Shown here in pieces: positions 24,468 to 58,560 of a DNA stretch of 64,000 nucleotides. A program made the position numbers and the translations under genes. Source of the DNA: Octopus sinensis (lineage: Eukaryota); the NCBI RefSeq assembly GCF_006345805.1, contig NC_042999.1, forward strand, positions 167,090,001 to 167,154,000. The letters run 5' to 3'. Each line of letters opens with the position of its first letter. Position 1 is the stretch's first letter. A model generated the notes under the pieces. It was not told the DNA's origin. It did no database searches and was given only the letters and a program-made list of their open reading frames with translations.

Positions 24468-24520
<53 letters not shown>

Positions 24521-24622
24521 GGAGTAAACACATAAATGTGAAACAAGGTGGAAAAAAGAGTACTCAAATACCAGTGGTAGAGTAATATGCTTTATTTTAA
24601 GCAGCAGAAAATTCAACAAAAT

Positions 24623-24660
24623 CTGTTACTCTGAGTTTCTCGTTGCCGTTCATCAGACAG
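24623..24660 (-). ncRNA. Minimal type I hammerhead motif (family B)
   Basis: Reverse complement of 26212-26249. Confidence 0.65.
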
Positions 24661-26211
24661 TTTTTGCTAGAATGGAACCGATATATCAATTCAATCTAGA
24701 CTCTTACAAACGCTACACCTTTAAAAAGAAATGGACTTGTTTGATTGGCCCTTTAGAAAAAACGGTCAATCTTCGAGCGATAAACAAAAAGGTCAAAAAT
24801 ATATGTATATATATATATAAAACTTATAAAAATTATAAAATCCGAGGAAAAAACCTTACATTGAATAAAATACATATTGACGTTAATGAAGAAAGTATAA
24901 ATTAATGCATAGAAATTAAACCTGTTATAAATATTACACTGCAATACATATTTATATTAAAATGTACATATATATATCAACATACACAAAAGGATGCGCG
25001 CAAAAGCCATACATATACAGACGTATGAATATAAATCTAAATATACACATAAATGCATGTGTACATATATTCACGCAAACCATCTCGCACGCAAGTTAAA
25101 AATCATCTATGTAGCGATTCTCTTGTATATTTGATTTTTGAAATTTTGATTTTGACTCTTGAACGATGAGCGCTACGATGGATTTTGTTTCCAAGCTATG
25201 TGGATCTTAATCCGTATAGCAAAGACTTATGTTTCTACATATACATTAGGAAAAACCTTCGACCTTGTTTTCATGGTATTGTATTGTATAGGATTACCTT
25301 GATTATTTATATTACCTTGATTATTTATAAATGATCCAAAATAGGGTGTTATATTTTATTTTATATGTCTTTCGTATATATTTTTATTAATGCACCTATT
25401 TTTTTAAAAAAAGCAATGTTTTTTTAAAAAAAAGCAATGTTTTTTTAAAAAAAGCAATGTTGTCAAAATTAGAATGTGGATATAAGTATGTGTATAGCCA
25501 AAGATATGTATTTGTAAGCATGCGTATCTGTGTATGTGTAAGTGAGAGTATGTTTGTGCTTAAGCACACATATACACGACTGTATGTATATGTATCCATT
25601 CGAACTTGTGTTTGTATACTTGTCTCCATATATGCCAATAATGCCGTTACACAGCTTGTGTACATAATTTTTTCTTATTTCGTTTTTTTCCCCACCCCTC
25701 CTTCGTTCCTTTTTCTCTCTCTTCCTTTCTTTCGTTCCCCCCTTACTCAGTATATGAGAATCGCTACATAGATGATTTTTAACTTGCGTGCGAGATGGTT
25801 TGCGTGAATATATGTACACATGCATTTATGTGTATATTTAGATTTATATTCATACGTCTGTATATGTATGGCGTTTGCGCGCATCCTTTTGTGTATGTTG
25901 ATATATATATGTACATTTTAATATAAATATGTATTGCAGTGTAATATTTATAACAGGTTTAATTTCTATGCATTAACGTCTTCATTAACGTCAATATGTA
26001 TTTTATTCAATGTAAGGTTTTTTCCTCGGATTTTATAATTTTTATAAGTGATTTTATATATATATACATATATTTTTGACCTTTTTGTTTATCGCTCGAA
26101 GATTGACCGTTTTTTCTAAAGGGCCAATCAAACAAGTCCATTTCTTTTTAAAGGTGTAGCGTTTGTAAGAGTCTAGATTGAATTGATATATCGGTTCCAT
26201 TCTAGCAAAAA

Positions 26212-26249
26212 CTGTCTGATGAACGGCAACGAGAAACTCAGAGTAACAG
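26212..26249 (+). ncRNA. Minimal type I hammerhead motif (family B)
   Basis: ctgt-CTGATGA-acg-gcaa-cga-GAAA-ctcagag-TA-acag. GUA triplet, GNRA-capped stem II with an A-A mismatch at its base. Confidence 0.65.
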
Positions 26250-26309
26250 ATTTTGTTGAATTTTCTGCTGCTTAAAATAAAGTATATATATATATATATA
26301 TATATATAT

Positions 26310-26450: not shown

Positions 26451-27840
26451 ATATATATATATATATAAGTTCACCAAAATTTAGATTCAGATGAATGTGG
26501 TACTTAAGTTAAAGGCACCAGAATTTTGTATGGTATTATCCATATAAATCAAGTGGGGTGATTATAATCAAAATAAGCAACAAAGATATCCAAGGTAGTG
26601 TAGTACAATTGTTTCATGCTACTTCATTTTATTAAACACTGTAAGTATTATATCAGTTTTAAAATGTTGAGCAATCTTCAGTCACATATAGATTTTTTTT
26701 AATTAAACGGACAATGCACATTCTTATACTTATTTCATTTGCCAACATTACAAAGAGGGTAGATATATAGACAGAGAGGTTAATTTCATCATTAAGAACA
26801 TGGTGGTAGTATGTTCTTCTCCTTTTGTAGATTTTATCACTGAGTTCACTTTGTTAATTAGATCTAACAGTGGGGAGGGGGTTTTCTATTCTTGGTTCAA
26901 TAGAGACAAACAAGAATTTTTTCTATTTATAGATAGAGGAAGGGGTAGTACAAATGTCAAATCCATTGTCATTTCGAGGAATTTAGTTTAGACATATATG
27001 AATGTATTATAGCAAAAGCTAGTAGGCTGAAGTTATATATCAATACCTTGTAAAAGGAATTTGACTCGCGAAAACTGTACAAAGCCCGTCAATACATGTA
27101 TATTTGTATGCGTCAGCATATTTCTACGTATCTGGATCTGTGTCGGTGTTCTGTCTATGTTTACCGGTGTAAAAGGGCGTGGAGAGTTGAATCCTTTTCA
27201 TCATATACTGATATTCGACCTGGTCTTTTCTTACAAATATCTTCACACCCAGTAACGGAGCAGAAACAGGTCTATGTTTTGATAAGATCGAAACCCACAC
27301 ATCCTGCCACTATACATTTTCAGAGACAACTTTAAAATTATCTGGCTTACGCAATTATTCTAAGGGCGTAACGCTCCTTCCACTTTTGCTTCTGTCACAA
27401 GGCACTATTTAATGGGAATATGAAATGAATATTTCCTGTGTAGAATGATGTTGATACTGTGAATGTACAATTATTTTGTAATGCATTTTAAAGGTTGAAT
27501 GCTTTGTTTTACAATTCCCTGTTCCTACGCCAGAGACCGCTGTGAGTTGTGCAAGTAAGCTAAATGGTCGCAAATCTGGTAATTTATCTGATAAGGTTGT
27601 AGCTTCTCTTTCTGATGTTACTCGTTTTATTTGAGGTCTGTTGGTTTGAGCGTGAAGACTAATACTGATAATACGTGAGGCAATCAAAATATTTTAGGCT
27701 TCAGTCATTAGAATACGGACCTTGACATTGAAATCATTACACATCCATATGCATATATTTACACGTACACTACCACCAACGCCACCAGCACCGCCACCAC
27801 CACCGCCACCGCGACAACCACCACCACCACTACCACCACT

Positions 27841-30800
27841 TGGCTGTGTGGTAAGAAGCCACAGAGGTGGTTGTGTGGCATGAAGCCAGAGAGGTGGAAG
27901 TTGGGTAAGAAGCCAGAGAGGTAGTTGTTTGGTAAGAAGCCACAGATGTGGGTGTATGGTAAGAAGCCACAGAGGTGGCTGTTTGGTAAGAAGCCACAGA
28001 GGTGGTTGTTTAGCAAGAAGCCACAGAGGTGGTTGTTTGGTAAGAAGCCACAGAGGTGGCTGTGTGGTAAGAAGCCATAGAGGTGGCTGTGTGGTAAGAA
28101 GCCACAGAGGTTGCTGTGTGATAAGAAGCCACAGAGGTGGCTGTCTAGTAAGAAGCCACAGAGGTGGCTGTGTGGTAAGAAGCCACAGAGGTGGCTGTTT
28201 AGTAAGAACCCACAGAGGTGGCTGTGTGGTAAGAAGCCACAGAGGTGGCTGTTTGGTATGAAGCCACAGAGGTGGCTGTGTGGTAAGAAGCCACAGAGGT
28301 GGTTGTGTGGTAGGAAGTCACAGAGGAGGCTGTTTGGTAAGAAGCCACAGAGGTGGCTGTTTAGTAAGAACCCACAGAGGTGGCTGTGTGGTAAGAAGCC
28401 ACAGAGGTGGCTGTTTGGTATGAAGCCACAGAGGTGGCTGTGTGGTAAGAAGCCACAGAGGTGGTTGTTGGTAAGAAGCCACAGAGGGGCTGTGTGGTAA
28501 GAAGCCATAGAGGTGGCTGTGTGGTAAGAAGCCACAGAGGTTGCTGTGTGATAAGAAGCCACAGAGGTGGCTGTCTAGTAAGAAGCCACAGAGGTGGCTG
28601 TGTGGTAAGAAGCCACAGAGGTGGCTGTTTAGTAAGAACCCACAGAGGTGGCTGTGTGTGGTAAGAAGCCACAGAGGTGGCTGTTGGTATGAAGCCACAG
28701 AGGTGGCTGTGTGGTAAGAAGCCACAGAGGTGGTTGTGTGGTAGGAAGTCACAGAGGAGGCTGTTTGGTAAGAAGCCACAGAGGTGGCTGTTTAGTAAGA
28801 ACCCACAGAGGTGGCTGTGTGGTAAGAAGCCACAGAGGTGGCTGTTTGGTATGAAGCCACAGAGGTGGCTGTGTGGTAAGAAGCCACAGAGGTGGTTGTT
28901 TGGTAAGAAGCCACAGAGGTTGCTTTTTGGTAAGAATCCACAGAGGTGGCTGTGTGGTAAGAAACCACAGAGGTGGTTGTTTGGTAAGAAGCGACAGAGG
29001 TGGTTGTTTGGTAAGAAGCGACAGAGGTGGCTGTTTGGTAAGAAGCCACAGAGGTGGCTGTTTGGTAAGAAGCCACAGGGGTGACTGTGTGGTAAGACGC
29101 CACAGAGGTGGCTGTTTGGTAAGAAGCCACAGAGGTGGCTATTTGGTAAGAAGCCACAGAGGAGGCTGTTTGGTAAGAAGCCACAGAGGTGCCTGTGTGG
29201 AAACAAGCCACAGAGGTGGCTGTTTAGTAAGAACCCACAGAGGTGGCTGTGTGGTAAGAAGCCACAGAGGAGGCTGTTTGGTAAGAAGCCACAGAGGAGG
29301 CTGTTTGGTAAGAAGCCACAGAGGTGGCTCTTTGGTAAGAAGCCACAGAGGTGGCTGTGTGGTAAGAAGCCACAGAGGTGGCTGTTTGGTAAGAAGCCAC
29401 AGAGGTGGTTGTTTGGTAAGAAGCCACAGAGGAGGCTGTTTGGTAAGAAGCCACAGAGGTGGCTGTTTAGTAAGAACCCACAGAGGTGGATGTGTGGTAA
29501 GAAGCCACAGAGGTGGCTGTTTGGTAAGAAGTCACAGAGGTGGCTGATTGGAAAGAAGCCACAGAGGAGGCTGTTTGGTAAGAAGACACAGAGGTGGTTG
29601 TTTGGTAAGAATTCACAGAGGTGGCTGTTTGGTAAGAAGCCACAGATGTGGCTGTGTGGTAAGAAGCCACAGAGGTGGCTGTGTGGTAACAAGCCACAGA
29701 GGTGGCTGTTTGGTAAGAAGTCACAGAGGTGGCTGTTTGGAAAGAAGTCACAGAGGAGGCTGTTTGGTAAGAAGCCACAGAGGTGGTTGTTTGGTAAGAA
29801 GCCACAGAGGTGGCTGTTTAGTAAGAAGTCACAGAGGTGGCTGTTTGGTAAGAAGTCACAGAGGTGGCTGTTTGGTAAGAAGCCACAGAGGTGGCTGTTT
29901 GGTAAGAAGCCACAGAGTTGGCTGTGTGGTAAGAAGCCACAGAGTTGGCTGTGTGGTAAGAAGACACAGAGGTGGCTGTGCGGTAAGAAGCCACAGAGGT
30001 GACTGTGTGGTAAGAAGACACAGAGGTGGCTGTTTGGTAAGAAGCCGTAGGGGTGGCTGTGTGGTAAGAAGCCACAGAGGTGGCTGTGAGGTAAGAAGCC
30101 ACAGAGGTGGCTGTGTGGTAAGAAGCCACAGAGGTGGCTGTGTGGTAAGAAGCCACAGAGGTGGCTGTGTGGTAGGAAGCCACAGAGGTGGCTGTGTGGT
30201 AAGAAGCCACAGAGGTGGCTGTGTGGTAAGAAGCCACAGAGGTGGATGTGTGGTAAGAAGCCACGGAGGTGGATGTGTGGTAAGAAGCCACGGAGGTGGA
30301 TGTGTGGTAAGAAGCCACGGAGGTGGCTGGGTGGTAAGAAGCCACAGAGGTGGGTGTGTGGTAAGAATCCACAGAGGTGGTTGTTTGGTAAGAAGCCACA
30401 GAGGTGGCTGTTTGGTAAGAAGCCACAGAGGTGGCTGTTTGGTAAGAAGCCACAGAGGTGGGTGTGTAGTAAGAAGCTACAGAGGTGGCTGTGTGGTAAG
30501 AAGCCACAGAGGTGGCTGTGTGGTAAGAAGCCACAGAGGTGGGCGTGTGGTAAGAAGCCACAGAGGTGGCTGTTTGGTAAGAATCCACAGAGGTGGGTGT
30601 GTGGTAAGAAGCCACAGAGGTGGCTGTGTGGTAAGAAGCCATAGAGGTGGCTGTTAGGTAAGAAGCCACAGAGGTGGTTGTGTGGTAAGAAGCCACAGAG
30701 GTGGGTGTATGGTAAGCGCCACAGAGGTGGCTGTGTGTTAAGAAGTCACAGAGGTGGCTGTTTGGTAAGAAGCCACAGAGGTGCCTGTTTGGTAAGAAGC

Positions 30801-33800
30801 CACAGAGGTGGCTGTTTGGTAAGAAGCCACAGAGGTGCCTGTGTGGAAAGAAGCCACAGAGGTGGCTGTTTGGTAAGAATCCAAAGAGGTGGCTATTTGT
30901 TAAAAAGCCACGTAGGTGGCTGTGTGGTAAGAAGCCATAGAGGTGGTTGTGTGGTAAGAAGCCACAGAGGTGGCTGTGTGGTAAGAAGACACAGAGTTGG
31001 CTGTTTGGTAAGAAGCCACAGAGGTGGCTGTGTGGAAAGAAGCCACAGAGTGGCTGTGTGGTAAGAAGCCACAGAGGTGGCTGTGTGGTAAGAAGCCACA
31101 GAGGTGGCTGTGTGGTAATAAGCCACAGAGGTGGTTGTGTGGTAATAAGCCACAGAGGAGGCTGTTTGGTAAGAAGCCACAGATGTGGCTGTTTGGTAAG
31201 AAGCCACAGAGGTGGCTGTTTGGTAAGAAGCCACAGTGGTGGCTGTTTGGTAAGAAGCCACAGCGGTGGTTGTAAGAAGCCACAGAGGTGGCTGTTTGGT
31301 AAGAAGCCACAGATGTGGCTGTCTGGTAAGAAGCCACAGAGGTGGGTGCTTGGTAAGAAGCCACAGAGGTGGCTGTTAGGTAAGAAGCCACAGAGGTGGT
31401 TGTTTGGTAAGAAGCCACAGAGGTGGCTGTTTGGTAAGAAGCCACAGAGGTGGCTGTTTGGTAAGAAGCCACAGAGGTGGCTGTTTGGTAAGAAGCCACA
31501 GAGGTGGCTGTTTGGTAAGAAGCCACAGAGGTGGCTGTTTGGTAAGAAGCCACAGAGGTAGTTGTTTGGTAAGAAGCCACAGAGGTGGCTGTGTGGTAAG
31601 AATCCACAGAGGTGGCTGTTTGGTAAGGGGCCACAGAGGTGTATGTTTGGTAAGAAGCCACAGAGGTGGCTGTTTGGTAAGAAGCCACAGAGGTGGCTGT
31701 GTGGTAAGAAGCCACAGAGGTGGCTGTTAGGTAAGAAGCCACAGAGGTGGCTGTTTGGTAAGAAGCCACAGAGGTGGCTCTTTGGTAAGAAGCCACAGAG
31801 GTTGCTTTTTGGTAAGAATCCACAGAGGTGGCTGTGTGGTAAGAAGCCACAGAGGTGGTTGTTTGGTAAGAAGCCACAGAGGTGGCTGTTTGGTAAGAAG
31901 CCACGGAGGTGGCTGTTTGGTAAGACGCCCCAGAGGTGGCTGTATGTAAGAAGCCACAGAGGTGGCTGTGTGGTAAGAAGCCACAGAGGTGGCAGTGTGG
32001 TAAGAAGCCACAGAGGTGGCTCTTTGGTAAGAATCCACAGAGGTGGGTGTGTGGTAAGAAGCCACAGAGATGGCTGTGTGGTAAGAAGCCATAGAGGTGG
32101 CTGTTAGGTAAGAAGCCACAGAGGTGGTTGTGTGGTAAGAAGCCACAGAGGTGGGTGTATGGTAAGCGCCACAGAGGTGGCTGTGTGTTAAGAAGTCACA
32201 GAGGTGGCTGTTTGGTAAGAAGCCACAGAGGTGCCTGTTTGGTAAGAAGCCACAGAGGTGGCTGTTTGGTAAGAAGCCACAGAGGTGCCTGTGTGGAAAG
32301 AAGCCACAGAGGTGGCTGTTTGGTAAGAATCCAAAGAGGTGGCTGTTTGTTAAAAAGCCACGTAGGTGGCTGTTTGGTAAGAAGCCACAGAGGTGGCTGT
32401 GTGGAAAGAAACCACAGAGGTGGCTGTGTGGTAAGAAGCCACAGAGGTGGCTGTGTGGTAAGAAGCCACAGAGGTGGCTGTGTGGTAATAAGCCACAGAG
32501 GTGGTTGTGTGGTAATAAGCCACAGAGGAGGCTGTTTGGTAAGAAGCCACAGATGTGGCTGTTTGGTAAGAAGCCACAGAGGTGGCTGTTTGGTAAGAAG
32601 CCACAGAGGTGGCTCTTGGTAAGAAGCCACAGCGGTGGTTGTAAGAAGCCACAGAGGTGGCTGTTGGTAAGAAGCCACAGATGTGGCTGTCTGGTAAGAA
32701 GCCACAGAGGTGGGTGCTTGGTAAGAAGCCACAGAGGTGGCTGTTAGGTAAGAAGCCACAGAGGTGGTTGTTTGGTAAGAAGCCACAGAGGTGGCTGTTT
32801 GGTAAGAAGCCACAGAGGTGGCTGTTTGGTAAGAAGCCGCAGAGGTGGCTGTTTGGTAAGAAGCCACAGAGGTGGCTGTTTGGTAAGAAGCCACAGAGGT
32901 AGTTGTTTGGTAAGAAGCCACAGAGGTGGCTGTGTGGTAAGAATCCACAGAGGTGGCTGTTTGGTAAGGGGCCACAGAGGTGTATGTTTGGTAAGAAGCC
33001 ACAGAGGTGGCTGTTTGGTAAGAAGCCACAGAGGTGGCTGTGTGGTAAGAAGCCACAGAGGTGGCTGTTAGGTAAGAAGCCACAGAGGTGGCTGTTTGGT
33101 AAGAAGCCACAGAGGTGGCTCTTTGGTAAGAAGCCACAGATGTTGATTTTGGTAAGAATCCACAGAGGTGGCTGTGTGGTAAGAAGCCACAGAGGTGGTT
33201 GTTTGGTAAGAAGCCACAGAGGTGGCTGTTTGGTAAGAAGCCACGGAGGTGGCTGTTTGGTAAGACGCCCCAGAGGTGGCTGTATGTAAGAAGCCACAGA
33301 GGTGGCTGTGTGGTAAGAAGCCACAGAGGTGGCTCTTTGGTAAGAAGCCACAGAAATGGCTCTGTGGTAAGAGGCCACAGAGGTGTGTGTGTGGTTAGAA
33401 GCCACAGAGGTGGTTGTTTGATAAGAAGCCACAGAGGTGGATGTTTGGTAAGAAGCCACAGAGGTGGCTGCTTGGAAAGAAGCCACAGAGCTGGCTGTGT
33501 GCTAAGTAGCCACAGAGGTGGCTGTTTGGTAAGAAGCCGCAGGGGTGGCCGTGTGGTAAGAAGCCACAGAGGTGGCTGTTTGGGAAGAAGCCACAGAGGT
33601 GGCTGTTTGGTAAGAAGCCACAGTGGTGGCTGCTTGGTATGAAGCCACAGAGGTGGCTGTGTGGTAAGAAGCCACAAAGGTGGTTGTTTGGTAAGAAGCC
33701 ACAGAGGTGGCTGTGTGGTAAGAAGTCACAGAGGAGGCTCTTTGGTAAGAGGCCACAGAGGTGTATGTTTGGTAAGAAGCCACAGAGGTGGCTGTGTGGT

Positions 33801-36800
33801 AAGAAGCCACAGATGTGGCTGAGTGGTAAGATGCCACAGAAGTGGCTGTGTGGTAAGAAGCCACAGAGGTGGCTGTTTGGTAAGAAGCCACAGAGGTGGT
33901 TGTTTGGTAAGACGCCACAGAGGTGGCTGTTTGGTAAGAAGCCACAGAGGTGGCTGTTTGGTAAGAAGCCACAGTGGTGGCTGTTTGGTAAGAAGCCACA
34001 GAGGTGGCTATTTGGTAAGAAGCCACAGAGGTAGTTGTTTGGTAAGAATCCACAGAGGTGGCTGTGTGGTAAGAATCCACAGAGGTGGCGGTGTGGTAAG
34101 AGGCCATAGAGGTGTATGTTTGGTAAGAAGCCACAGAGGTGGCTGTGTGGTAAGAAGCCACAGAGGTGGCTGTGTGGTAAGAATCCACAGAGGTGGCTGT
34201 TTGCTATGAAGCCACAGAGGTGGGTGCTTGGTAAAAAGCCACAGAGGTGGCTCTTTGGTAAGAAGCCACAGAGGTTGCTTTTTGGTAAGAATCCAAAGAG
34301 GTGGCTGTGTGGTAAGAAACCACAGAGGTGGTTGTTTGGTAAGTAGCCACAGAGGTGGCTGTTTGGTAAGAAGCCACAGAGGTGGCTGTTTGGTAAGAAG
34401 CCCCAGAGGTGGCTGTTTGTAAAAATCACAGAGGTGGCTGTGTGGTAAGAAGCCACAGGGGTGACTGTGTGGTAAGACGCCACAGAGGTGGCTGTTTGGT
34501 AACAAGCCACAGAGATGGCTCTGTGGTAAGTAGCCACAGAGGTGTCTGTGAGGTAAGAAGCCACAGAGGTGGTTGTTTGATAAGAAGCCACAGAGGTGGC
34601 TGTTTGGTAAGAAGCCACAGAGGAGGCTGTTTGGTAAGAAGCCACAGAGCTGGCTGTGTGCAAAGTAGCCACAGAGGTGGCCGTGTGGTAAGAAGCCACA
34701 GAGGTGGCTGTTTGGTAAGAAGCCACAGAGGTGGCTGTTAGGTAAGAAGCCACAGTGGTGGCTGCTTGGTATGAAGCCACAGAGGTGGCTGTGTGGTAAG
34801 AAGCCACAGAGGTGGTTGTTTGGTAAGAAGCCACAAAGGTGGCTGTGTGGAAAGAAGCCACAGAGGTGGCTGTGTGGTAACAAGTCACAGAGGAGGCTCT
34901 CTGGTAAGAAGCCACAGAGGTGGCTGTTTGGTAAGAAGCCACAGAGGTGGCTGTTTAGTAAGAAGCCACAGAGGTGGCAGTTTGGTAAGAATCCACAGAG
35001 GTGGGTGTGTGGTAAGAAGCCACAGAGGTGGCTGTGTGGTAAGAAGCCATAGAGGTGGCTGTTAGGTAAGAAGCCACAGAGGCGGTTGTGTGGTAAGAAG
35101 CCACAGAGGTGGGTGTATGGTAAGCGCCACAGAGGCGGCTGTGTGTTAAGAAGTCACAGAGGTGGCTGTTTGGTAAGAAGCCACAGAGGTGCCTGTTTGG
35201 TAAGAAGCCACAGAGGTGGCTGTTTGGTAAGAAGCCACAGAGGTGCCTGTGTGGAAAGAAGCCACAGAGGTGGCTGTTTGGTAAGAATCCAAAGAGGTGG
35301 CTGTTTGTTAAAAAGCCACTTAGGTGGCTGTGTGGTAAGAAGCCATAGAGGTGGTTGTGTGGAAAGAAGCCACAGAGGTGGCTGTGTGGTAAGAAGACAC
35401 AGAGTTGGCTGTTTGGTAAGAAGCCACAGAGGTGGCTGTGTGGAAAGAAGCCACAGAGGTGGCTGTGTGGTAAGAAGCCACAGAGGTGGCTGTGTGGTAA
35501 GAAGCCACAGAGGTGGCTGTGTGGTAATAAGCCACAGAGGTGGTTGTGTGGTAATAAGCCACAGAGGAGGCTGTTTGGTAAGAAGCCACAGTTGTGGCTG
35601 TTTGGTAAGAAGCCACAGAGGTGGCTGTTTGGTAAGAAGCCACAGAGGAGGCTGTTTGGTAAGAAGCCACAGCGGTGGTTGTAAGAAGCCACAGAGGTGG
35701 CTGTTTGGTAAGAAGCCACAGATGTGGCTGTCTGGTAAGAAGCCACAGAGGTGGCTGCTTGGTAAGAAGCCACAGAGGTGGCTGTTAGGTAAGAAGCCAC
35801 AGAGGTGGTTGTTTGGTAAGAAGCCACAGAGGTGGCTGTTTGGTAAGAAGCCACAGAGGTGGCTGTTTGGTAAGAAGCCACAGAGGTGGCTGTTTGGTAA
35901 GAAGCCACAGAGGTAGTTGTTTGGTAAGAAGCCACAGATGTGGCTGTGTGGTAAGAATCCACAGAGGTGGCTGTTTGGTAAGGGGCCACAGAGGTGTACG
36001 TTTGGTAAGAAGCCACAGAGGTGGCTGTGTGGTAAGAAGCCACAGAGGTGGCTGTGTGGTAAGAAACCACAGAGGTGGCTGTGTGGTAAGAAGCCACAGA
36101 GGTGGCTGTTTGGTAAGAAGCCACAGAGGTGGCTCTTTGGTAAGAAGCCACAGAGGTTGCTTTTTGGTAAGAATCCACAGAGGTGGCTGTGTGGTAAGAA
36201 GCCACAGAGGTGGTTGTTTGGTAAGAAGCCACAGAGGTGGCTGTTTGGTAAGAAGCCACGGAGGTGGCTGTTTGGTAAGAAGCCCCAGAGGTGGCTGTAT
36301 GTAAGAAGCCACAGAGGTGGCTGTGTGGTAAGAAGCCACAGAGGTGGCTGTGTGGTAAGATGCCACAGAAGTGGCTGTGTGGTAAGAAGCCACAGAGGTG
36401 GCTGTTTGGTAAGAAGCCACAGAGGTGGTTGTTTGGTAAGAAGCCACAGAGGTGGCTGATTGGTAAGAAGCCACAGAGGTGGCTGTTTGGTAAGAAGCCA
36501 CAGAGGTGGCTGTTTGGTAAGAAGCCACAGAGATGGCTCTGTGGTAAGAAGCCACAGAGGTGTGTGTGTGGTTAGAAGCCACAGAGGTGGTTGTTTGATA
36601 AGAAGCCACAGAGGGGGCTGTTTGGTAAGAAGCCACAGAGGTGGCTGCTTGGAAAGAAGCCACAGAGCTGGCTGTGTGCTAAGTAGCCACAGAGGTGGCT
36701 GTTTGGTAAGAAGCCGCAGGGGTGGCCGTGTGGTAAGAAGCCACAGAGGTGGCTGTTTGGGAAGAAGCCACAGAGGTGGCTGTTTGGTAAGAAGCCACAG

Positions 36801-39800
36801 TGGTGGCTGCTTGGTATGAAGCCACAGAGGTGGCTGTGTGGTAAGAAGCCACAGAGGTGGTTGTTTGGTAAGAAGCAACAGAGGTGGCTGTGTGGTAAGA
36901 AGTCACAGAGGAGGCTCTTTGGTAAGAGGCCACAGAGGTGTATGTTTGGTAAGAAGCCACAGAGGTGGCTGTGTGGTAAGAAGCCACAGATGTGGCTGTG
37001 TGGTAAGATGCCACAGAAGTGGCTGTGTGGTAAGAAGCCACAGAGGTGGCTGTTTGGTAAGAAGCCACAGAGGTGGTTGTTTGGTAAGAAGCCACAGAGG
37101 TGGCTGATTGGTAAGAAGCCACAGAGGTGGCTGTTTGGTAAGAAGCCACAGAGGTGGCTGTTTGGGAAGAAGCCACAGAGGTGGCTATTTGGTAAGAAGC
37201 CACAGAGGTAGTTGTTTGGTAAGAATCCACAGAGGTGGCTGTGTGGTAAGAATCCACAGAGGTGGCGGTGTGGTAAGAGGCCATAGAGGTGTATGTTTGG
37301 TAAGAAGCCACAGAGGTGGTTGTGTGGTAAGAAGCCACAGAGGTGGCTGTGTGGTAAGAATCCACAGAGGTGGCTGTTTGCTATGAAGCCACAGAGGTGG
37401 GTACTTGGTAAAAAGCCACAGAGGTGGCTCTTTGGTAAGAAGCCACAGAGGTTGCTTTTTGGTAAGAATCCACAGAGGTGGCTGTGTGGTAAGAAACCAC
37501 AGAGGTGGTTGTTTGGTAAGTAGCCACAGAGGTGGCTGTTTGGTAAGAAGCCACAGAGGTGGTGTTTGGTAAGAAGCCCCAGAGGTGGCTGTTTGTAAGA
37601 AGCCACAAAGGTGGCTGTGTGGTAAGAAGCCACAGGGGTGACTGTGTGGTAAGACGCCACAGAGGTGGCTGTTTGGTAACAAGCCACACAGATGGCTCTG
37701 TGGTAAGAAGCCACAGAGGTGTCTGTGAGGTAAGAAGCCACAGAGGTGGCTGTTTGGTAAGAAGCCACAGAGGTAGTTGTTTGGTAAGAAGCCACAGATG
37801 TGGCTGTGTGGTAAGAATCCACAGAGGTGGCTGTTTGGTAAGGGGCCACAGAGGTGTACGTTTGGTAAGAAGCCACAGAGGTGGCTGTGTGGTAAGAAGC
37901 CACAGAGGTGGCTGTGTGGTAAGAATCCACAGAGGTGGCTGTGTGGTAAGAAGCCACAGAGGTGGCTGTTTGGTAAGAAGCCACAGAGGTGGCTCTTTGG
38001 TAAGAAGCCACAGAGGTTGCTTTTTGGTAAGAATCCACAGAGGTGGCTGTGTGGTAAGAAGCCACAGAGGTGGTTGTTTGGTAAGAAGCCACAGAGGTGG
38101 CTGTTTGGTAAGAAGCCACGGAGGTGGCTGTTTGGTAAGAAGCCCCAGAGGTGGCTGTATGTAAGAAGCCACAGAGGTGGCTGTGTGGTAAGAAGCCACA
38201 GAGGTGGCTGTGTGGTAAGAAGCCACAGAGGTGGTTCTTTGGTAAGAAGCCACAGAGATGGCTCTGTGGTAAGAAGCCACAGAGGTGTGTGTGTGGTTAG
38301 AAGCCACAGAGGTGGTTGTTTGATAAGAAGCCACAGAGGGGGCTGTTTGGTAAGAAGCCACAGAGGTGGCTGCTTGGAAAGAAGCCACAGAGCTGGCTGT
38401 GTGCTAAGTAGCCACAGAGGTGGCTGTTTGGTAAGAAGCCGCAGGGGTGGCCGTGTGGTAAGAAGCCACAGAGGTGGCTGTTTGGGAAGAAGCCACAGAG
38501 GTGGCTGTTTGGTAAGAAGCCACAGTGGTGGCTGCTTGGTATGAAGCCACAGAGGTGGCTGTGTGGTAAGAAGCCACAGAGGTGGCTGTGTGGTAAGATG
38601 CCACAGAAGTGGCTGTGTGGTAAGAAGCCACAGAGGTGGCTGTTTGGTAAGAAGCCACAGAGGCGGTTGTTTGGTAAGAAGCCACAGAGGTGGCTGATTG
38701 GTAAGAAGCCACAGAGGTGGCTGTTTGGTAAGAAGCCACAGAGGTGGCTGTTTGGGAAGAAGCCACAGAGGTGGCTATTTGGTAAGAAGCCACAGAGGTA
38801 GTTGTTTGGTAAGAATCCACAGAGGTGGCTGTGTGGTAAGAATCCACAGAGGTGGCGGTGTAGTAAGAGGCCATAGAGGTGTATGTTTGGTAAGAAGCCA
38901 CAGAGGTGGCTGTGTGGTAAGAAGCCACAGAGGTGGCTGTGTGGTAAGAATCCACAGAGGTGGCTGTTTGCTATGAAGCCACAGAGGTGGGTACTTGGTA
39001 AAAAGCCACAGAGGTGGCTCTTTGGTAAGAAGCCACAGAGGTTGCTTTTTGGTAAGCATCCACAGAGGTGGCTGTGTGGTAAGAAACCACAGAGGTGGTT
39101 GTTTGGTAAGTAGCCACAGAGGTGGCTGTTTGGTAAGAAGCCACAGAGGTGGCTGTTTGGTAATAAACCCCAGAGGTGGCTGTTTGTAAGAAGCCACAAA
39201 GGTGGCTGTGTGGTAAGAAGCCACAGGGGTGACTGTGTGGTAAGACGCCACAGAGGTGGCTGTTTGGTAACAAGCCACAGAGATGGCTCTGTGGTAAGAA
39301 GCCACAGAGGTGTCTGTGATGTAAGAAGCCACAGAGGTGGTTGTTTGATAAGAAGCCACAGAGGTGGCTGTTTGGTAAGAAGCCACAGAGGAGGCTGTTT
39401 GGTAAGAAGCCACAGAGCTGGCTGTGTGCAAAGTAGCCACAGAGGTGGCCGTGTGGTAAGAAGCCACAGAGGTGGCTGTTTGGTAACAAGCCACAGAGGT
39501 GGCTGTTTGGTAAGAAGCCACAGTGGTGGCTGCTTGGTATGAAGCCACAGAGGTGGCTGTGTGGTAAGAAGCCACAGAGGTGGTTGTTTGGTAAGAAGCC
39601 ACAGAGGTGGCTGTGTGGAAAGAAGCCACAGAGGTGGCTGTGTGGTAAGAAGTCACAGAAGAGGCTGTTTGGTAAGAAGCCACAGAGGTGGCTGTTTGGT
39701 AAGAAGCCACAGAGGTGGTTGTTTGGTAAGAAGCCACAGAGGTGGCTGTTCGGTAAGAAGCCACAGACGTGGCTGTGTGGTAAGAAGCCACAGAAGTGGC

Positions 39801-42800
39801 TGTTTGGTAACAATCCACAGAGGTGGTTGTTTGATAAGAAGACACAGAGGTGGCTTTGTGGTAAGAAGCCACAGAGGTGGCTGTGTGGTAAGAAGCCACA
39901 GAGGTGGCTGTGTGGTAAGAAGCCACAGAGGTGGCAGTGTGGTAAGAAGCCACAGAGGTGGCTGTGTGGTAAGAAGCCACAGAGGTGGCTGTTTGTTAAG
40001 AAGCCACAGAGGTGGCTGTGTGGTAAGAAGCCACAGAGGTGGTTGTTTGTTAAGAAGACACGGAGGTGGCTGTTTTGTAAGAAGCCACAGAGGTGGCTGT
40101 TTGGTAAGAAACCACAGAGGTGGTTGTTTGGTAAGAAGCCACAGAGGTGGCTGTGTGGTAAGAAGCCAGAGAGGTGGCTGTTTGGTAAGAAGCCGCAGGG
40201 GTGGTTGTTTGGTAAGAAGGCACAGAGGTGGCTGTGTGGTAAGAAGCCACAGAGGTGGCTGTTTGGTAAGAAGCCACAGAGGTGGTTGTTTGGTAAGAAT
40301 CCGCAGAGGTGGCTGTGTGGTAACAAGACACAGAGGTGGCTGTTTCGTACGAAACCGCAGGGGTGGATGTTTGGTAAGAAACCACAGAGGTGTGTGTTTG
40401 GTAAGAAGCCACAGAGGTGGCTGCTTGGTAAGAAGCCACAGAGCTGGCTGTGTGCTAAGTAGCCACAGAGGTGGCTGTTTGGTAAGAAGCCGCAGGGGTG
40501 GCCGTGTGGTAAGAAGCCTCAGAGGTGGCTGTTTGGTAAGAAGCCACAGAGGTGGCTGTTTGGTAAGAAGCCACAGTGGTGGCTGCTTGGTATGAAGCCA
40601 CAGGGGTGGCTGTGTGGTAAGAAGCCACAGAGGTGGCTGTTTGGTAAGAAGCACAGGGGTGGTTGTTTGGTAAGAAGCCACAGAGGTGGCTGTTTGGTAA
40701 GAAGCACAGAGGTGGTTGTTTGGTAAGAAGCCACTGAGGTGGCTGTTTGGTAAGAAGCCACAGAGGTGGTTGTTTGGTAAGAATCCAAGAGGTGGCTGTG
40801 TAGTAAGAACCCACAGAGGTGGCTGTTTGGTAAGAAGCCACAGGGGTGGCTGTTTGGTAAGAAGCCGCAGGGGTGGTTGTTTGGTAAGAGGCAACAGAGG
40901 TGGCTTTTTGGTAAGAAGCCACAGAGGTGGCTGTGTGGTGAGAAGCCACAGAGGTGGCTGTTTGGTAAGAAGCTACAGAGGTGGCTGTGTGGTAAGAAGC
41001 CACAGAGGTGGTTGTTTGGTAAGAAGCCACAGAGGTGGCTGTGTGGTAAGAAACCACAGAGTTGGCTGTTTGGTAAGAAGCCACAGAGGTGGCTGTGTGG
41101 TTAGAAGCCAGAGAGGTGGTTGTTTGGTAAGAAGCCACAGAGGTGGCTCTTTGGTAAGAAGCCACAGAGGTGGCTGTGTGGTAAGAAGCCACAGAGGTGG
41201 CTGTGTGGTAAGAAGCCGCAGAGATGGTTGTTTGGTAAGAAGCCACAGAGGTAGCTGTGTGGTAAGCCACGGAGGTGGCTGTGCGGTAAAAAGCCATAGA
41301 TGTGGCTGTGTGGTAAGAAGCCACAGAGGTGGCTGTGTGGTAAGAAGCCACAGAGGTGGTTGTTTGGTAAGAAGCCACAGAGGTGGTTGTTTGGTAAGAA
41401 GCCACAGAGGTGGCTGTGTGGTATGAAGCCACAGAGGTGGTTGTTTGGTAGGAAGCCACAGAGGTGGCTGTGTGGTAAGAAGCCACAGAGGTGGCTGTTT
41501 GGTAAGAAGCCATAGAGGTGGCTGTGTGGTAAAAGCGACAGAGGTGGCTGTTTGGTAAGAAGCCACAGAGGTGGCTGTGTGGTAAGAAGACACAGAGGTG
41601 GCTGTTTGGTAAGAAGCCGCAGGGCTGGTTGTTTGGTAACAAACCACAGAGGTGGCTGTTTGGTTAGACGTCACAGAGGTGGCTGTGTGGTAAGATGCCA
41701 CAGAGGTGGCTGTGTGGTATGATGCCACAGATGTCGCTGTGTGGTAAGAAGCCACAGAGGTGGCTGTGTGTTAAGAAGCCAGAGAGGTGGCTGTTTTGTT
41801 AGAAGCCAGAGAGGTGGCTGTGTGTTAAAAAGCCACAGTTGTGGCTGTCTGGTAAGACGCCACAAAGGTGGCTGTTTGGTAAGAAGCCACAGAGGTGGCT
41901 GCGTGGTAAGAAGCACCAGAGGTTGCTGTGTGGTAAGAAGCCACAGAGGTGGCTGTTTGGTAAGAAGCCACAGAGGTGGCTGTGTGGTAAGAAGCCGCAG
42001 AGGTTACTGTGTGGTAAGAAGCCACAGAGGTGGCTGTGTGGTAAGAAGCCACAGAGGTGGCTGTGTGGTAAGAAGCCACAGAGGAGGCTGTTTGGTAAGA
42101 AGCCACAGACGTGGCTGTGTGGTAAGAAGCCACAGTGGTGGCTGTCTAGTAAGAAGCCACAGAGGTGGCTGTTTGTAATAAGCCACAGAGGTGGCTGTGT
42201 GGTAAGGATCCACAGAGGTGGCTGTTTGGTAAGAGGCCACAGAGGTGTCTGTTTGTTATGAAGCCACAGAGGTGGCTGTGTGGTAAGAAGCCATAGAGGT
42301 GGCTGTTTGGTAGGAGGCCACAGAGGTGGCTGTGTAGTAAGAAGCCACAGAGGTGGCTGTGTGGTAAGAAGCCACAGAGGTGGTTGTTTGGTAAGAAGCC
42401 ACAGAGGTGGCTGTTTGGTAAGAAGCCACAGAGGTGGCTGTTTGGTAAGAAGCCACAGAGGTGGCTGTTTGGTAAGAAGCCACAGAGGTAGTTGTTTGGT
42501 AAGAATCCACAGAGGTGGCTGTGTGGTAAGAATCCACAGAGGTGGCTGTGTGGTAAGAATCCACAGAGGTGGCTGTTTGCTATCAAGCCACAGAGGTGGC
42601 TGTTTGGTAAGAAGCCACAGAGGTTGCTCTTTGGTAAGAAGCCACAGAGGTGGCTGTGTGGTACGAAGCCACAGAGGTGGTTGTTTGGTAAGAAGCCACA
42701 GAGGTGGCTGTTTGGTAAGAAACCATAGAGGTGGCTGTTTGGTAAGAAGCCACAGAGGTGGCTGTTTGGTAAGAAGCCACAGAGGTGGCTGTTTGGTAAG

Positions 42801-43931
42801 AAGCCACAGAGGTGGCTGTGTGGTAAGAAGCCACAGAGGTGGCTGTTTGGTAAGACGCCACAGAGGTGGCTGTTTGGTAAGAAGCCACAGAGGTGGCTGT
42901 TTGTTAAGAAGCCACAGAGGTGGCTGTGTGGTAAGACGCGACAGAGGTGGCTGTTTGGTAAGAAGCCACAGAGGTGGCTGTTTGGTAAGAAGCCACAGAG
43001 GTGGCTCTGTGGTAAGAAGCCACAGAGGTGGCTGTTTGGTAAGAAGCCACAGAGGTGGCTGTGTGGTAAGAAGCCACAGAGGTGGCTGTTTGGTAAGAAA
43101 CCACAGAGGTGGCTGTGTGGTAAGAAGCCACAGAGGTGGCTGTTTGGTAAGAATCCACAGAGGTGACTGTGTGGTAAGAAGCCATAGAGGTGGTTGTTTG
43201 GCCAGAAGCCACAGAGGTTTCTCTGTGATAATAAGCCACAGAGGTGGCTGTGTGGTAAGAAGCCACAGAGGTGGCTGTTTGGTAAGAAGCCAAGAGGTGG
43301 CTGTTTGTAAGAAGCCACAGAGGTGGCTGTTTGGTAAGAAGCCACAGAGGTGGCTGTGTGGTAAGAAGCCACAGATGTGGCTGTTTGATAAGAAGCCACA
43401 GAGGTGGCTGTGTGGTAAGAAGCCACAGAGGTGGCTGTTTGGTAAGAAGCCACAGAGGTGGCTGTTTGGTAAGAAGCCACAGAGGTGGCTGTTTGTTAAG
43501 AAGCCACAGAGGTGGCTGTGTGGTAAGACGCGACAGAGGTGGCTGTTTGGTAAGAAGCCACAGAGGTGGCTGTTTGGTAAGAAGCCACAGAGGTGGCTGT
43601 GTGGTAAGAAGCCACAGAGGTGGCTGTTTGGTAAGAAGCCACAGAGGTGGCTGTGTGGTAAGAAGCCACAGAGGTGGCTGTTTGGTAAGAAACCACAGAG
43701 GTGGCTGTGTGGTAAGAAGCCACAGAGGTGGCTGTTTGGTAAGAATCCACAGAGGTGACTGTGTGGTAAGAAGCCATAGAGGTGGTTGTTTGGCCAGAAG
43801 CCACAGAGGTTTCTCTGTGATAATAAGCCACAGAGGTGGCTGTGTGATAAGAAGCCACAGAGGTGGCTGTTTGGTAAGAAGCCACAGAGGTGGCTGTTTG
43901 GTAAGAAGCCACAGAGGTGGCTGTTTGGTAA
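27841..43931. repeat. Giant 27-bp minisatellite/satellite array (~16.1 kb, ~600 units), consensus GTGGCTGT(G/T)TGGTAAGAAGCCACAGAG
   Basis: The 27-bp period is directly visible and explains the 9-aa repeats in the ORF track (GKKPQRWLF, VRSHRGGCL, ASYQTATSV). Confidence 0.98.
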
Positions 43932-44063
43932 TACAGCAATCGGCGGGCGTTGCTGTTGCCCTCATTTTCCCCCATTTCATTTGTCATTCATATCATTATG
44001 TGTGTGTGTCCAGCCCGAGACTTCCTTTCTCTGTAAATCCCTTGTGGCCAATTAAAGGAAATA

Positions 44064-44430
44064 AAGAAGCTTGCTTCCCGACCACATGTTTCCGTGTTCA
44101 GTCCCACCGTGTGACACTTGGACAAATGTCTTCTACTATAGCCTGGGGCCGACGACATCATTGTGCTTAGATTTGGTAGACGGAAACTAAAAGAAGCCCA
44201 TCGTATATATATGTATATATGTTTCTGCGTCTGTTTTTTTGTCCCCCCCCATCATCGCTTGACCTTTATTGTTGGTGTGTTTACGTTCCCGTAACCTAGC
44301 GGTTCAGCAAAAGAGACCGATAGAATAAGTACTAAGCTTACAAAGAATAAGTACTGAGGTTGTTTTGTTCGACTAAAGGCCGTACTCCAGCATGGCCACA
44401 GTCAGATTACTGAAACAAGTAAAAGAATAA
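44064..44430 (+). mobile_element. SINE S1 body lacking its first ~13-20 nt (starts aagaagcttgcttcccgaccacatg)
   Basis: Aligns with 52236-52650 and 58122-58560 from the AAGAAGC position onward. Confidence 0.85.
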
Positions 44431-44464
44431 ATTCTTTTATTCTTCCTCTTGTTTCAATGATTTG

Positions 44465-44671
44465 ACTATCACCTTGAAGGATTCTAGTCGAACAAATAGA
44501 GCCCAGGACTTTCTTTTTAAGTCTAGTACTTATTCTATCGACCTATTTTGCCGAATCGCTAAGTTACGGGGATGTAAATATACCAACACCGGTCGTCAAG
44601 CGGTGATGGGAGACAAACACAGACACAAGGACACACACATACGCACGCTCATACACATACATACAACCATG

Positions 44672-44742
<71 letters not shown>

Positions 44743-44895
44743 CATATATATATATATATAATATATATACGACTGGCTTCTTTCAGTTTCTATCTACTAA
44801 ATCCACTCACAAGGCTTTGTTCGGCTCGAGGCTATAGTAGAAGACACCTCCCGGAACTATATGGTTGGGAAGCAAGTTTCTTACCACACAGCCTC
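44465..44895 (-). mobile_element. SINE S1 copy with an internal deletion
   Basis: Minus-strand head aggctgtgtggtaagaaacttgcttccc, an internal (TA)n tract and the S1 tail. Confidence 0.75.
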
Positions 44896-45329
44896 AGCTG
44901 ATTAAAATACGTTTAATTTTCAAACCTTAATTGACTCTACAGACAGATTTCAAATTCTATGAATACCTTTATTCAAACTGAAAACATTTCTGCTCCAGGC
45001 TCTGCTCATAACGCAATAGAATCGCAAACATCAAGCAACATTTTGTCCTGTATTCATGCGCAAAATATAGATCAAAGTCTCGGAATACGATTGTCATGTA
45101 ACTTTAATTGATTAAGTATTTTGCAGAGATTTAATTCTTTAACTACTTTAGTTCCCACTTTACTATATGTTGTTTCTACAGCAGGCATAATAAAATATCC
45201 TATTGAAATAAAAAGGGCCATATAGCTCCTTGGAGCAGACATGATGCTCGCTGTGAATTTAAAAAAAAATTCCTGCCAATTTGTGAAAGATATCGTCGAA
45301 AATATGTCATCTTGAATTTGAACGCGATT

Positions 45330-46074: not shown

Positions 46075-46216
46075 AAGCCTGGTACTTATCCTATCGGTAT
46101 CTTTTGCCGAACCGCAAGTTTAAGGGGATGTAAATACACCGACGCCGGCTGTCAAGCAGTGATGGGACACACACACATGTATATATACATACATAATACA
46201 TACATACATACATACA

Positions 46217-46230
<14 letters not shown>
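46075..46230 (-). mobile_element. SINE S1 fragment
   Basis: cctggtacttatcctatcggtatcttttgccgaaccgc...gtcaagcagtgatgggacacacacac is the reverse complement of the S1 body. Confidence 0.7.
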
Positions 46231-46247
<17 letters not shown>

Positions 46248-46249
46248 CC

Positions 46250-52235: not shown

Positions 52236-52650
52236 TGGCTGTGTGGTAAGTAGCTTGCCTACCAACCACATGGTTCTGGGTTCAGTCCCACTGCGTGGCA
52301 TCTTGGGCAAGTGTCTTCTGCTATAGCCTCGGGCCGACCAATGCTTTGTGAGTGGATTTGGTTGACGGAAACTGAAAGAAGCCTGTCGTATATATGTATA
52401 TATATATATGTATGTATGTGTATGTATATGTTTGTGTGTCTGTGTTTGTCTCCCTAGCATTGCTTGAGAACCGATGCTGGTGTGTTTACGTCCCCGTCAC
52501 CTAGCGGTTCGGCAAAACAGACCGATCGAATAAGTACTGGGCTAACAAAGAATAAGTCCCTGGGTCGATTTGATCGACTAAGGGCGGTGCTCCAGCATGG
52601 CCGCAGTCAAATGACTGAAACAAGTAAAAGAGTAAAAGAGTAAAGAGTAA
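52236..52650 (+). mobile_element. Near full-length tRNA-derived SINE S1
   Basis: A-box-like TGGCTGTGTGG, B-box-like GGTTCAGTCC, internal microsatellite and an (agtaaaag)n tail. Confidence 0.88.
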
Positions 52651-58121: not shown

Positions 58122-58285
58122 AGGCGCAGACCTGGCTGTATGGTAAGAAGACTGCTTCCCAACCACATGGTTCCAGGTTCAGTCCCACTGTGTGGCGCCT
58201 TGGGCAAGTGTCTTCTCTTATAGCCTCAAGCCGACTAAATCCTTGTGAGTGGATTTAGTCGACGGAAACTGAAAGAAGCCCGTCC

Positions 58286-58339
<54 letters not shown>

Positions 58340-58560
58340 TCTATGTGTCTGTGTTTGTCCCCACATCACCGCTTGACAGCTGGTGTTGGTATGTTTACGT
58401 CCACGTATCATAGCGGTTCGGCGAAAGAGACCGATAGGATAAGTACTAGGCTTTAACGAAACGTCCTGAGATGATTTGTTAGTCTATAACTCTTCGAAGC
58501 GGTGCTCAAGCATGACCGTAGTCAAATGACTGAAAAAAGTAAAAGAAAAGAATAAAAGAA
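58122..58560 (+). mobile_element. Full-length SINE S1
   Basis: Starts aggcgcagacctggctgtatggtaagaagactgcttcccaaccacatgg and has the S1 body and tail. Confidence 0.85.

What the first reader, a model, noticed from the sequence alone, without database searches (positions are those of the whole stretch)
27841..43931. 16-kb satellite born from the tRNA-like head (A-box/D-arm) of a SINE
The 27-bp unit contains TGGCTGTGTGGTAAGAAGC. This is 18/19 identical to the S1 SINE start at 52236 (tggctgtgtggtaagtagc) and 17/18 identical to the one at 58133. The array begins at 27841 with exactly this head. GCT...AGC corresponds to a tRNA D-stem, and the added CAC extends it to a 6-bp GTGGCT/AGCCAC inverted repeat. 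Every unit can therefore fold in two registers (4-nt or 11-nt loop), a plausible driver of fold-back and slippage expansion. The result is ~600 tandem A-box-like motifs with a strongly G-rich strand. Satellites derived from transposons are known in general, but I do not know of this one being described.
Basis: partly seen in the sequence, partly recalled or inferred. Interest (0 to 1): 0.82.

Follow-up and report, generated by a model that had tools for sequence, protein, structure and literature searches.

The report
Satellite DNA grown from a SINE head
A 16-kb stretch of about 600 tandem 27-base units is non-coding satellite DNA that grew out of the first ~27 bases of one mobile element (a SINE) whose remaining body still sits at the end of the array; this is a clear example of a process already described in reptiles, and no function is evident.

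Summary
Window 27841-43931 is one head-to-tail array of 598 units of 27 bp at about 89% identity. It is G-rich on the + strand and has two main variants, TGGCTGT[G/T]TGGTAAGAAGCCACAGAGG.

The last unit is partial and stops at ...TGGCTGTTTGGTAA (43931). After 134 bp of unrelated DNA, a SINE copy resumes at exactly the next base, GAAGCTTGCTTCC... (44066), and runs collinear with a full-length copy to its 3' end near 44436. So the array is the amplified 5' head of this SINE copy.

Outside the array, the 19-mer matches only the three intact SINE heads in the window. The other 8 bases of the unit probably also come from the SINE's 5' end, giving a unit of about SINE positions 3-29, but the evidence for this is weak.

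The array is not coding: every frame has at least 20 stops and there is no codon periodicity. It contains no B-box, and only 168 units keep the SINE's A-box-like motif. It grew by multi-unit block duplications. Hairpin potential is real, but its role is untested.

The closest known case is the SINE-derived satellites of squamates. Genome-wide distribution and the species could not be checked.

The parts
27841..43931 (+). Satellite array: 598 units of 27 bp, consensus TGGCTGT[T/G]TGGTAAGAAGCCACAGAGG, same orientation as the SINE
   Evidence: TRF; unit split and variants; internal block duplications; not coding
43918..43931 (+). Terminal partial unit TGGCTGTTTGGTAA, which is SINE head positions up to unit position 14
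   Evidence: Sequence read; junction analysis
43932..44065 (.). 134-bp interruption with no SINE or satellite similarity. It ends in the A-rich ...GGAAATAAA. Probably a later insertion that separated the last unit from the SINE body.
   Evidence: No other copy in the window apart from a short TG run; removing it restores a collinear SINE head plus body
44066..44436 (+). Remainder of the parent SINE copy: GAAGCTTGCTTCCCGACCACATG..., B-box-like GTTCAGTCCC, CORE-like region, internal TA/TG microsatellite and 3' part
   Evidence: BLAST to the 52236 copy; multiple alignment; global alignment of the joined flanks to 58113-58560, 81% identity
27768..27839 (.). Imperfect (CAC)24 microsatellite directly abutting the 5' edge of the array. 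No SINE 5' terminus is recognisable here.
   Evidence: TRF; sequence read
58123..58560 (+). Full-length dispersed copy of the same SINE family, used as reference. Its head is GGCGCAGACCTGGCTGTATGGTAAGAAGA.
52236..52400 (+). Dispersed SINE copy whose head TGGCTGTGTGGTAAGTAGC matches the unit at 18 of 19 bases
44440..44915 (-). Dispersed SINE copy lying tail-to-tail with the parent copy. Its head is AGGCTGTGTGGTAAGAAAC at 44876-44894.

Best explanation
This is a non-coding, SINE-derived satellite caught at its birth site.

A tRNA-derived, CORE-type SINE inserted here in + orientation. A segment of about 27 bp at its 5' end was then duplicated in tandem. That segment is roughly SINE positions 3-29: the 5' acceptor-like bases plus the A-box/D-arm-like region, ending at ...GTAAGAAGC. 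The duplication then expanded to about 600 units (16 kb). Expansion went mainly by repeated duplication of multi-unit blocks of 0.3-1 kb, through unequal exchange or replication slippage/template switching. Partial homogenisation left two main variants (G8 and T8).

The last unit originally ran straight into the SINE body. A later 134-bp insertion split it after ...GGTAA.

Shown here: the array; its similarity to the SINE head; the register-exact continuation into the SINE body; the block-duplication pattern; the lack of coding capacity; the lack of B-boxes; and the hairpin potential.

Inferred: the order of events; unequal exchange as the mechanism; the hairpins (6-bp GTGGCT/AGCCAC, and TGTGGT/GCCACA in the G variant) as promoters of slippage; and the absence of function. 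With no B-box, the units are unlikely to recruit TFIIIC/Pol III.
For: - The array is real and regular.
- The 19-mer matches only the three intact SINE heads outside the array.
- Unit-versus-SINE alignment scores 17-18, against a shuffle maximum of 14-16 in 2000 shuffles per copy. The alignment extends upstream of TGGCTG into CAGAGG/CAGACC.
- The terminal unit stops at unit position 14, and the SINE at 44066 resumes at position 15 on the same strand. The joined flanks align to a full-length copy end to end, 309 of 383 bases identical.
- A rough chance estimate for this coincidence: 3 other + strand copies in 47.9 kb gives about 0.009 for a copy starting within 140 bp. A breakpoint matching within +/-1 of about 400 positions gives about 0.0075. 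The joint probability is below 1e-4.
- The parent copy carries AAGAAGC, as the units do.
- There are 13 block duplications of 12-35 units at lags of 16-182 units.
- Units near both edges are the most degenerate: the first 8 have 0,4,4,3,2,0,3,1 edits.
- Every frame has 20-296 stops, there is no 3-periodic variation, and 30 units carry indels. The array ORF has no Pfam hit and no protein homologue.
- The A-like and B-like boxes start 43 nt apart in the SINE copies, as in tRNA. There are 0 B-boxes in the array.
- The architecture (tandem units plus a longer terminal unit reaching the SINE terminus) is the one described for squamate SINE-derived satellites (PMC10702118).
Against: - The 5' edge of the array shows no SINE 5' terminus and no target-site duplication. 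It abuts a (CAC)n microsatellite, so the element's left boundary cannot be reconstructed.
- The 134-bp interruption is of unknown origin. Calling it an insertion is an inference.
- Homology of the 8-base linker to the SINE 5' end rests on two in-window copies (5 of 8 and 5 of 9 matches, p about 0.03 for the better one).
- An alternative source for the linker, the SINE's internal CCACATGG after a 12-nt deletion, fits about equally well.
- No tRNA model recognises the head.
- No other genome or locus could be examined, so it is unknown whether the satellite exists elsewhere, possibly without a SINE.
- The array length depends on the assembly.
Confidence: 0.85

Rival explanations
1. The unit is SINE-derived, but the amplification did not start here. 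A SINE master or variant copy already carrying two or more tandem head units retrotransposed to this site, and the array then expanded. The same head-repeat would then be found at many SINE 5' ends in the genome.
For: This would equally explain the register-exact continuation into the SINE body. SINEs with ~30-nt internal duplications, and squamate sSat loci present in thousands of copies, are reported (PMC10702118). The array's 5' edge lacks a recognisable SINE terminus.
Against: None of the other three SINE heads in the window shows even a 2-unit duplication. No external locus could be retrieved to test this.
Confidence: 0.1
2. The resemblance is coincidental. An unrelated 27-bp satellite happens to resemble the SINE head, and a 5'-truncated SINE happens to lie 134 bp downstream.
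For: SINEs are dense in this region: 5 copies of this family in 48 kb. The array and the SINE body are not physically contiguous.
Against: The 19-mer match is 18-19 of 19 and never reached by shuffles. The truncation point of the SINE equals the break point of the last unit to the base. The joint chance is below 1e-4.
Confidence: 0.02
3. The array is, or recently was, a protein-coding tandem repeat. An example would be a Ser/Thr-rich mucin-like exon read on the - strand (TSVASYQTA)n, starting from the ATG at 43987.
For: The period is a multiple of 3. Five of six frames are open in the consensus. A - strand ATG at 43987 opens into the S/T-rich frame for 163 aa.
Against: All frames carry at least 20 stops and the longest open stretch is 794 of 5363 codons. 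ORFs hop between frames at the 30 indel units. Variation shows no codon periodicity (0.049, 0.054 and 0.039 by unit position mod 3, leaving out position 8). There is no Pfam hit and no homologue among 5.8 billion proteins. The unit sequence is explained by the SINE.
Confidence: 0.02
4. The array is real but its size and structure are partly an assembly artefact: expansion or collapse of a shorter or longer tandem repeat.
For: Long homogeneous tandem arrays are error-prone in assemblies. The 24 units of 26 bp could be homopolymer or indel read errors.
Against: There are 223 distinct unit variants, nested non-identical block duplications and degenerate edges, which is what real, evolving sequence looks like. 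This rival does not affect the origin inference.
Confidence: 0.1

Closest known systems
SINE-derived satellites (sSats) of squamate reptiles (Vassetzky, Kosushkin & Ryskov 2023, Mob DNA; PMC10702118)
   Same: Both are tandem arrays whose unit is a portion of a tRNA-related SINE. Both have a longer terminal unit that continues to the SINE terminus. Squamate arrays reach about 1000-1200 units at 82-94% unit similarity and sometimes show alternating subvariants. The array here has 598 units, 89% similarity and G8/T8 variants.
   Different: Squamate units are 67-215 nt and usually include B-box, body or LINE-derived parts. Here the unit is only 27 bp and covers just the extreme 5' head (A-box-like region). 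The host appears to be a cephalopod, not a reptile. The number of loci and the chromosomal position are unknown here.
Mouse unstable VNTR/ESTR family expanded from SINE B1, and Alu-derived minisatellites (listed in PMC9659126)
   Same: A short internal motif of a SINE is amplified in situ into a long, unstable tandem array that remains flanked by the SINE.
   Different: Those units are 4-6 bp (mouse) or derive from A-rich or 3' regions (Alu). Here a 27-bp promoter-proximal head segment is amplified.
Amphibian tRNA-related / Pol III tandem families (Xenopus satellite 1/OAX, Hy/Pol III, PolIII/TAN, Rana/polIII)
   Same: Tandem repeats containing tRNA-like, Pol III promoter-like sequence.
   Different: Their units are 200-750 nt, often with both A and B boxes and transcribed in vitro. 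Their link to a dispersed SINE is judged inconclusive in PMC10702118. Here the link to a dispersed SINE is direct, but the units lack a B-box.
Mollusc transposon-derived satellites (CvA/pearl MITE or Helitron-like elements giving HindIII and BIV160 satellites in bivalves; listed in PMC9659126)
   Same: Same phylum and the same general route: an internal repeat of a non-autonomous mobile element becomes a satellite.
   Different: Those derive from class II elements with pre-existing internal repeats of about 160 bp. This one derives from a class I SINE head.

Membership tests
SINE-derived satellite (sSat sensu PMC10702118) | The repeat unit is similar to a portion of a dispersed SINE family | tested here: met
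   18-19 of 19 identity to three SINE heads, which are the only hits outside the array. The alignment score exceeds all 2000 shuffles for each of three copies.
SINE-derived satellite (sSat sensu PMC10702118) | Head-to-tail tandem array of many units | tested here: met
   597.5 copies by TRF; 598 units in my split.
SINE-derived satellite (sSat sensu PMC10702118) | A terminal unit extended into the SINE sequence up to the SINE terminus | tested here: met
   Met once the 134-bp interruption is removed. The last unit ...GGTAA (43931) plus GAAGCTTGC... (44066) aligns with the full-length copy to its 3' end, 81% identity.
SINE-derived satellite (sSat sensu PMC10702118) | Multiple loci per genome, with a subtelomeric preference | not testable with these tools
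   No cephalopod genome is reachable. Protein, contig and metagenome look-ups were empty.
tRNA-derived SINE (parent element) | Internal Pol III promoter: A-box and B-box at tRNA-like spacing | tested here: met
   A-like TGGCTGTGTGG and B-like GGTTCAGTCCC start 43 nt apart in copies 52236 and 58123. This is a motif-level match only.
tRNA-derived SINE (parent element) | The head is recognisable as a tRNA by a tRNA model | tested here: not met
   ARAGORN finds 0 genes. Rfam finds no tRNA hit at the gathering threshold, or at E<=10 on two SINE heads.
tRNA-derived SINE (parent element) | Dispersed copies with unrelated flanks | tested here: met
   Five copies in the window, on both strands, 77-88% identical.
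CORE-SINE / octopus OR1-type | Central CORE domain shared with MIR and OR1 | not tested
   This is a lead only. CTTGGGCAAGT... in the SINE resembles the MIR core as I recall it. PMC4824008 states that octopus OR1 is a CORE-SINE. No reference sequence was available to align.
Protein-coding tandem repeat | One frame open across the array, with codon-position bias in the variation | tested here: not met
   At least 20 stops in every frame and no 3-periodicity. No Pfam or homologue hit.
Functional Pol III / TFIIIC site array | A B-box in each unit | tested here: not met
   0 matches to GGTTCGANNCC, GWTCRANNC or GGTTCNNNNCC in the array. Only 1 unit matches the strict A-box, and 168 match the SINE's A-like motif.

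The most novel reading that the evidence does not exclude
SINE heads may be recurrent seeds of major structural satellites in this (apparently octopod) genome. This 27-bp family would then occupy many chromosomal sites, such as subtelomeric or centromeric blocks, or would act through its A-box-like/hairpin units as a chromatin boundary or small-RNA source. In that case a Pol III promoter fragment would have been turned into a chromosome-scale feature in cephalopods.
Probability: 0.07. Interest if true: 0.7.

Novelty: new member of a known kind. Interest (0 to 1): 0.35.

Why it matters
Direct links between dispersed SINEs and satellites have been called scarce. The 2023 squamate study left open whether SINE-derived satellites exist outside reptiles.

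This locus shows the same architecture in what looks like a cephalopod genome. The parent SINE body is still attached, so the origin, the unit boundaries and the later growth by block duplication can be read from a single locus.

It is also an extreme case: only 27 bp of the promoter-proximal head was amplified about 600-fold. It is useful as a worked example and for repeat annotation. It does not point to a new mechanism or function.

Tried and rejected
- Coding repeat: rejected. There are stops in all frames, the ORFs hop frames, there is no codon periodicity, and there is no Pfam or homologue hit.

- Finding the satellite or SINE elsewhere: all routes were empty.
  - A protein search with an array ORF gave 0 hits.
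  - An exact-product contig look-up was not on record.
  - A SINE-derived peptide gave 0 candidates.
  - A LINE RT ORF gave best hits of only 59% identity, so no close relative's DNA was reachable.
  - Two metagenome scans, with a 25-mer of the satellite and a 32-base SINE pattern, gave 0 hits.
  - The distribution across loci and species is therefore untested.

- tRNA identity of the head: ARAGORN and Rfam gave nothing.

- Literature: no paper in the held library describes a cephalopod satellite or contains these sequence strings.

- Regular higher-order repeat: rejected. Only irregular block duplications are present, and adjacent units are no more alike than random pairs (0.895 against 0.893).

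- Target-site duplication of the parent SINE: none recognisable by inspection of the sequence read. The 3' end abuts an inverted SINE and the 5' end abuts a (CAC)n run.

- The 134-bp interruption has no other copy in the window, so its source is unknown.
Full report
**1. Observation**

Tandem Repeats Finder reports a single array at 27841-43931: period 27, 597.5 copies, 89% matches. Splitting it against the consensus gives 598 units. Of these, 567 are exactly 27 bp and 24 are 26 bp, and there are 223 distinct variants. The two commonest differ only at unit position 8:
- TGGCTGTTTGGTAAGAAGCCACAGAGG, 82 exact copies
- TGGCTGTGTGGTAAGAAGCCACAGAGG, 75 exact copies

The array stands out compositionally. 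Its GC is 0.51-0.53 and its GC skew +0.40 to +0.47, against about 0.35 GC in the flanks.

**2. Not a gene**

The period is a multiple of three and five frames are open in the consensus, so I tested for coding.
- Every frame carries 20-296 stops, and the longest open stretch is 794 of 5363 codons.
- ORFs change frame at the 30 units that carry indels.
- Variation among units shows no codon periodicity.
- A 493-aa ORF covering all three minus-strand frames has no Pfam match and no homologue in the 5.8-billion-protein collection.

**3. Relation to the SINE**

The window holds five copies of one SINE family: 44064+, 44763-44893-, 51100+, 52216+ and 58133+. Three of them have an intact head.

In all non-array sequence, on both strands, the only matches to the unit's 19-mer at up to 4 mismatches are these three heads. 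A local alignment of the unit dimer against three SINE copies scores 17-18. In 2000 shuffles per copy, the highest score was 14-16.

In two copies the alignment runs upstream of TGGCTG into CAGAGG, matching CAGACC and CAGCTG. At a fixed, ungapped offset, the unit's remaining 8 bases CACAGAGG match the 5' end of the full-length copy (CGCAGACC) at 5 of 8 positions. One of the mismatches is a CpG-type transition. The unit is therefore probably a contiguous stretch of about 27 bp (roughly SINE positions 3-29), not a 19-mer plus added bases. This part rests on two copies and is weak (p about 0.03). Derivation of the linker from the internal CCACATGG after a deletion fits about as well.

**4. The decisive point: the array is still attached to its parent SINE**

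- The last unit is partial and ends ...GAGGTGGCTGTTTGGTAA at 43931.
- 134 bp follow that resemble nothing else in the window apart from a short TG run.
- At 44066 the sequence resumes GAAGCTTGCTTCCCGACCACATG..., which is the SINE from exactly the next head position.
- Joining the two flanks gives TGGCTGTTTGGTAAGAAGCTTGCTTCCC... This aligns end to end with the full-length copy at 58113-58560, through the B-box-like motif, the CORE-like region, the internal TA/TG microsatellite and the 3' part. Identity is 309 of 383 bases, or 81%.

By chance this needs a same-strand copy of the family starting within about 140 bp, at roughly 0.009 given the window's density. It also needs a truncation point that matches the break in the last unit within one base, at roughly 0.0075. 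The joint probability is below 1e-4.

This is the architecture reported for SINE-derived satellites in squamates: tandem units plus a longer terminal unit that reaches the SINE terminus (PMC10702118). The direction of derivation is therefore SINE to satellite, most simply at this very locus. The 134 bp are most simply a later insertion, and they end in the A-rich ...GGAAATAAA. That reading is an inference.

**5. What the head is**

The SINE copies carry an A-box-like TGGCTGTGTGG and a B-box-like GGTTCAGTCCC whose starts are 43 nt apart, the spacing seen in tRNA genes. The element is dispersed, and its central part looks CORE-like. This fits the octopus tRNA-derived SINEs of Ohshima and Okada, of which OR1 is cited as a CORE-SINE in PMC4824008.

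However, neither ARAGORN nor the Rfam tRNA model recognises the head, even at E<=10. The 'tRNA D-arm' reading is therefore at motif level only. I recognise the SINE as octopod from memory. No tool here could confirm the species.

**6. How the array grew**

There is no regular higher-order repeat. Instead there are at least 13 duplicated blocks of 12-35 units (0.3-0.9 kb) at lags of 16-182 units. Examples are 34005-34947 with 38772-39715, and 30594-31504 with 35002-35913. This points to repeated unequal exchange or template switching over multi-unit blocks, not to one-unit slippage alone.

Adjacent units are no more similar than random pairs (0.895 against 0.893). Units near both edges are more degenerate than average.

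The variant at position 8 that matches the SINE (G) is now the minority, with 229 units against 329 for T.

**7. Hairpins and Pol III motifs**

The G variant adds a TGTGGT/GCCACA stem. Four-unit single strands of either strand fold more stably than all 200 shuffles, with z from -4.0 to -6.1. This is compatible with structure-promoted slippage but does not demonstrate it.

The '600 A-boxes' idea needs tempering:
- only 1 unit fits the strict A-box consensus;
- 168 units keep the SINE's own A-like motif;
- the majority T8 variant departs further from the consensus;
- no unit has a B-box, the high-affinity TFIIIC site.

I therefore expect no Pol III/TFIIIC function. This is an inference.

**8. 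What could not be done**

All routes to related eukaryotic DNA were empty:
- protein searches;
- exact-product contig look-up;
- two metagenome scans.

Literature searches found no description of a cephalopod satellite or of these sequence strings. This does not exclude an entry in a repeat database.

**9. Verdict**

The new evidence that the parent SINE body is still attached makes it stronger.

The phenomenon belongs to a known kind. TE-derived satellites are well documented, and SINE-derived satellites were described in squamates in 2023. Mouse B1-derived and human Alu-derived minisatellites are older analogues (PMC9659126).

Three things are new here: the host group, the very short unit taken from the extreme 5' head, and the clear birth-site anatomy.

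Interest is moderate to low for a specialist. No function is indicated.

Noticed in passing
window 43932-44065: 134 bp of unique sequence splits the last satellite unit from the SINE body. It ends in the A-rich ...GGAAATAAA and has no other copy in the window. It could be a short retroposed or filler insertion.
   Followed up: partly
window 24585-25127 and 25751-26287: A large, near-perfect inverted repeat lies 1.5 kb upstream of the array. It consists of three collinear arm pieces, 99-100% complementary, about 540 bp per arm, with a 623-nt spacer. A separate 97-nt hairpin lies at 24280-24481. This may be a foldback element or a recent palindromic duplication.
   Followed up: partly
window 55898-55969: Interstitial telomere-like repeat (TTAGGG)12.
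   Followed up: no
window 14621-15045 (-), 51578-51930 (+), 54106-54822 (+), 57763-58112 (-): A second SINE family (head GGCGGCGAGCTGGCAGAA.CGTTAGCA.GCCGGGCGAAATGC...) occurs repeatedly as tandem or partial-tandem copies. One case is a 328-bp unit repeated 2.2 times at 96% identity. Tandem duplication of SINE sequence therefore seems common in this region.
   Followed up: partly
window 27768-27839: An imperfect (CAC)24 microsatellite directly abuts the 5' edge of the array and contains several GCCAC motifs like the unit. It may have replaced, or grown out of, the SINE or first-unit 5' end.
   Followed up: no
window 44066-44436 (+) and 44440-44915 (-): The parent SINE and a second copy of the same family lie tail-to-tail with almost no spacer, forming a palindromic junction (...aagaataaattcttttattctt...).
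   Followed up: no
window 47074-48071: About 1 kb of degenerate AC-rich repeats (periods 8-24) with strongly negative GC skew, -0.49 over 46-48 kb.
   Followed up: no
window 11207-13272 (+), 21385-22532 (-), 46197-46868 (+), 50067-50849 (-), 62783-63998 (+): Retroelement debris. Three ORFs hit RVT_1 and one hits GIY-YIG (possibly Penelope-like); 46197-46868 had no Pfam hit and only shows a GIY-YIG-like motif by eye. No host gene was recognised anywhere in the window. The best external relatives of the RT are only 59% identical.
   Followed up: partly
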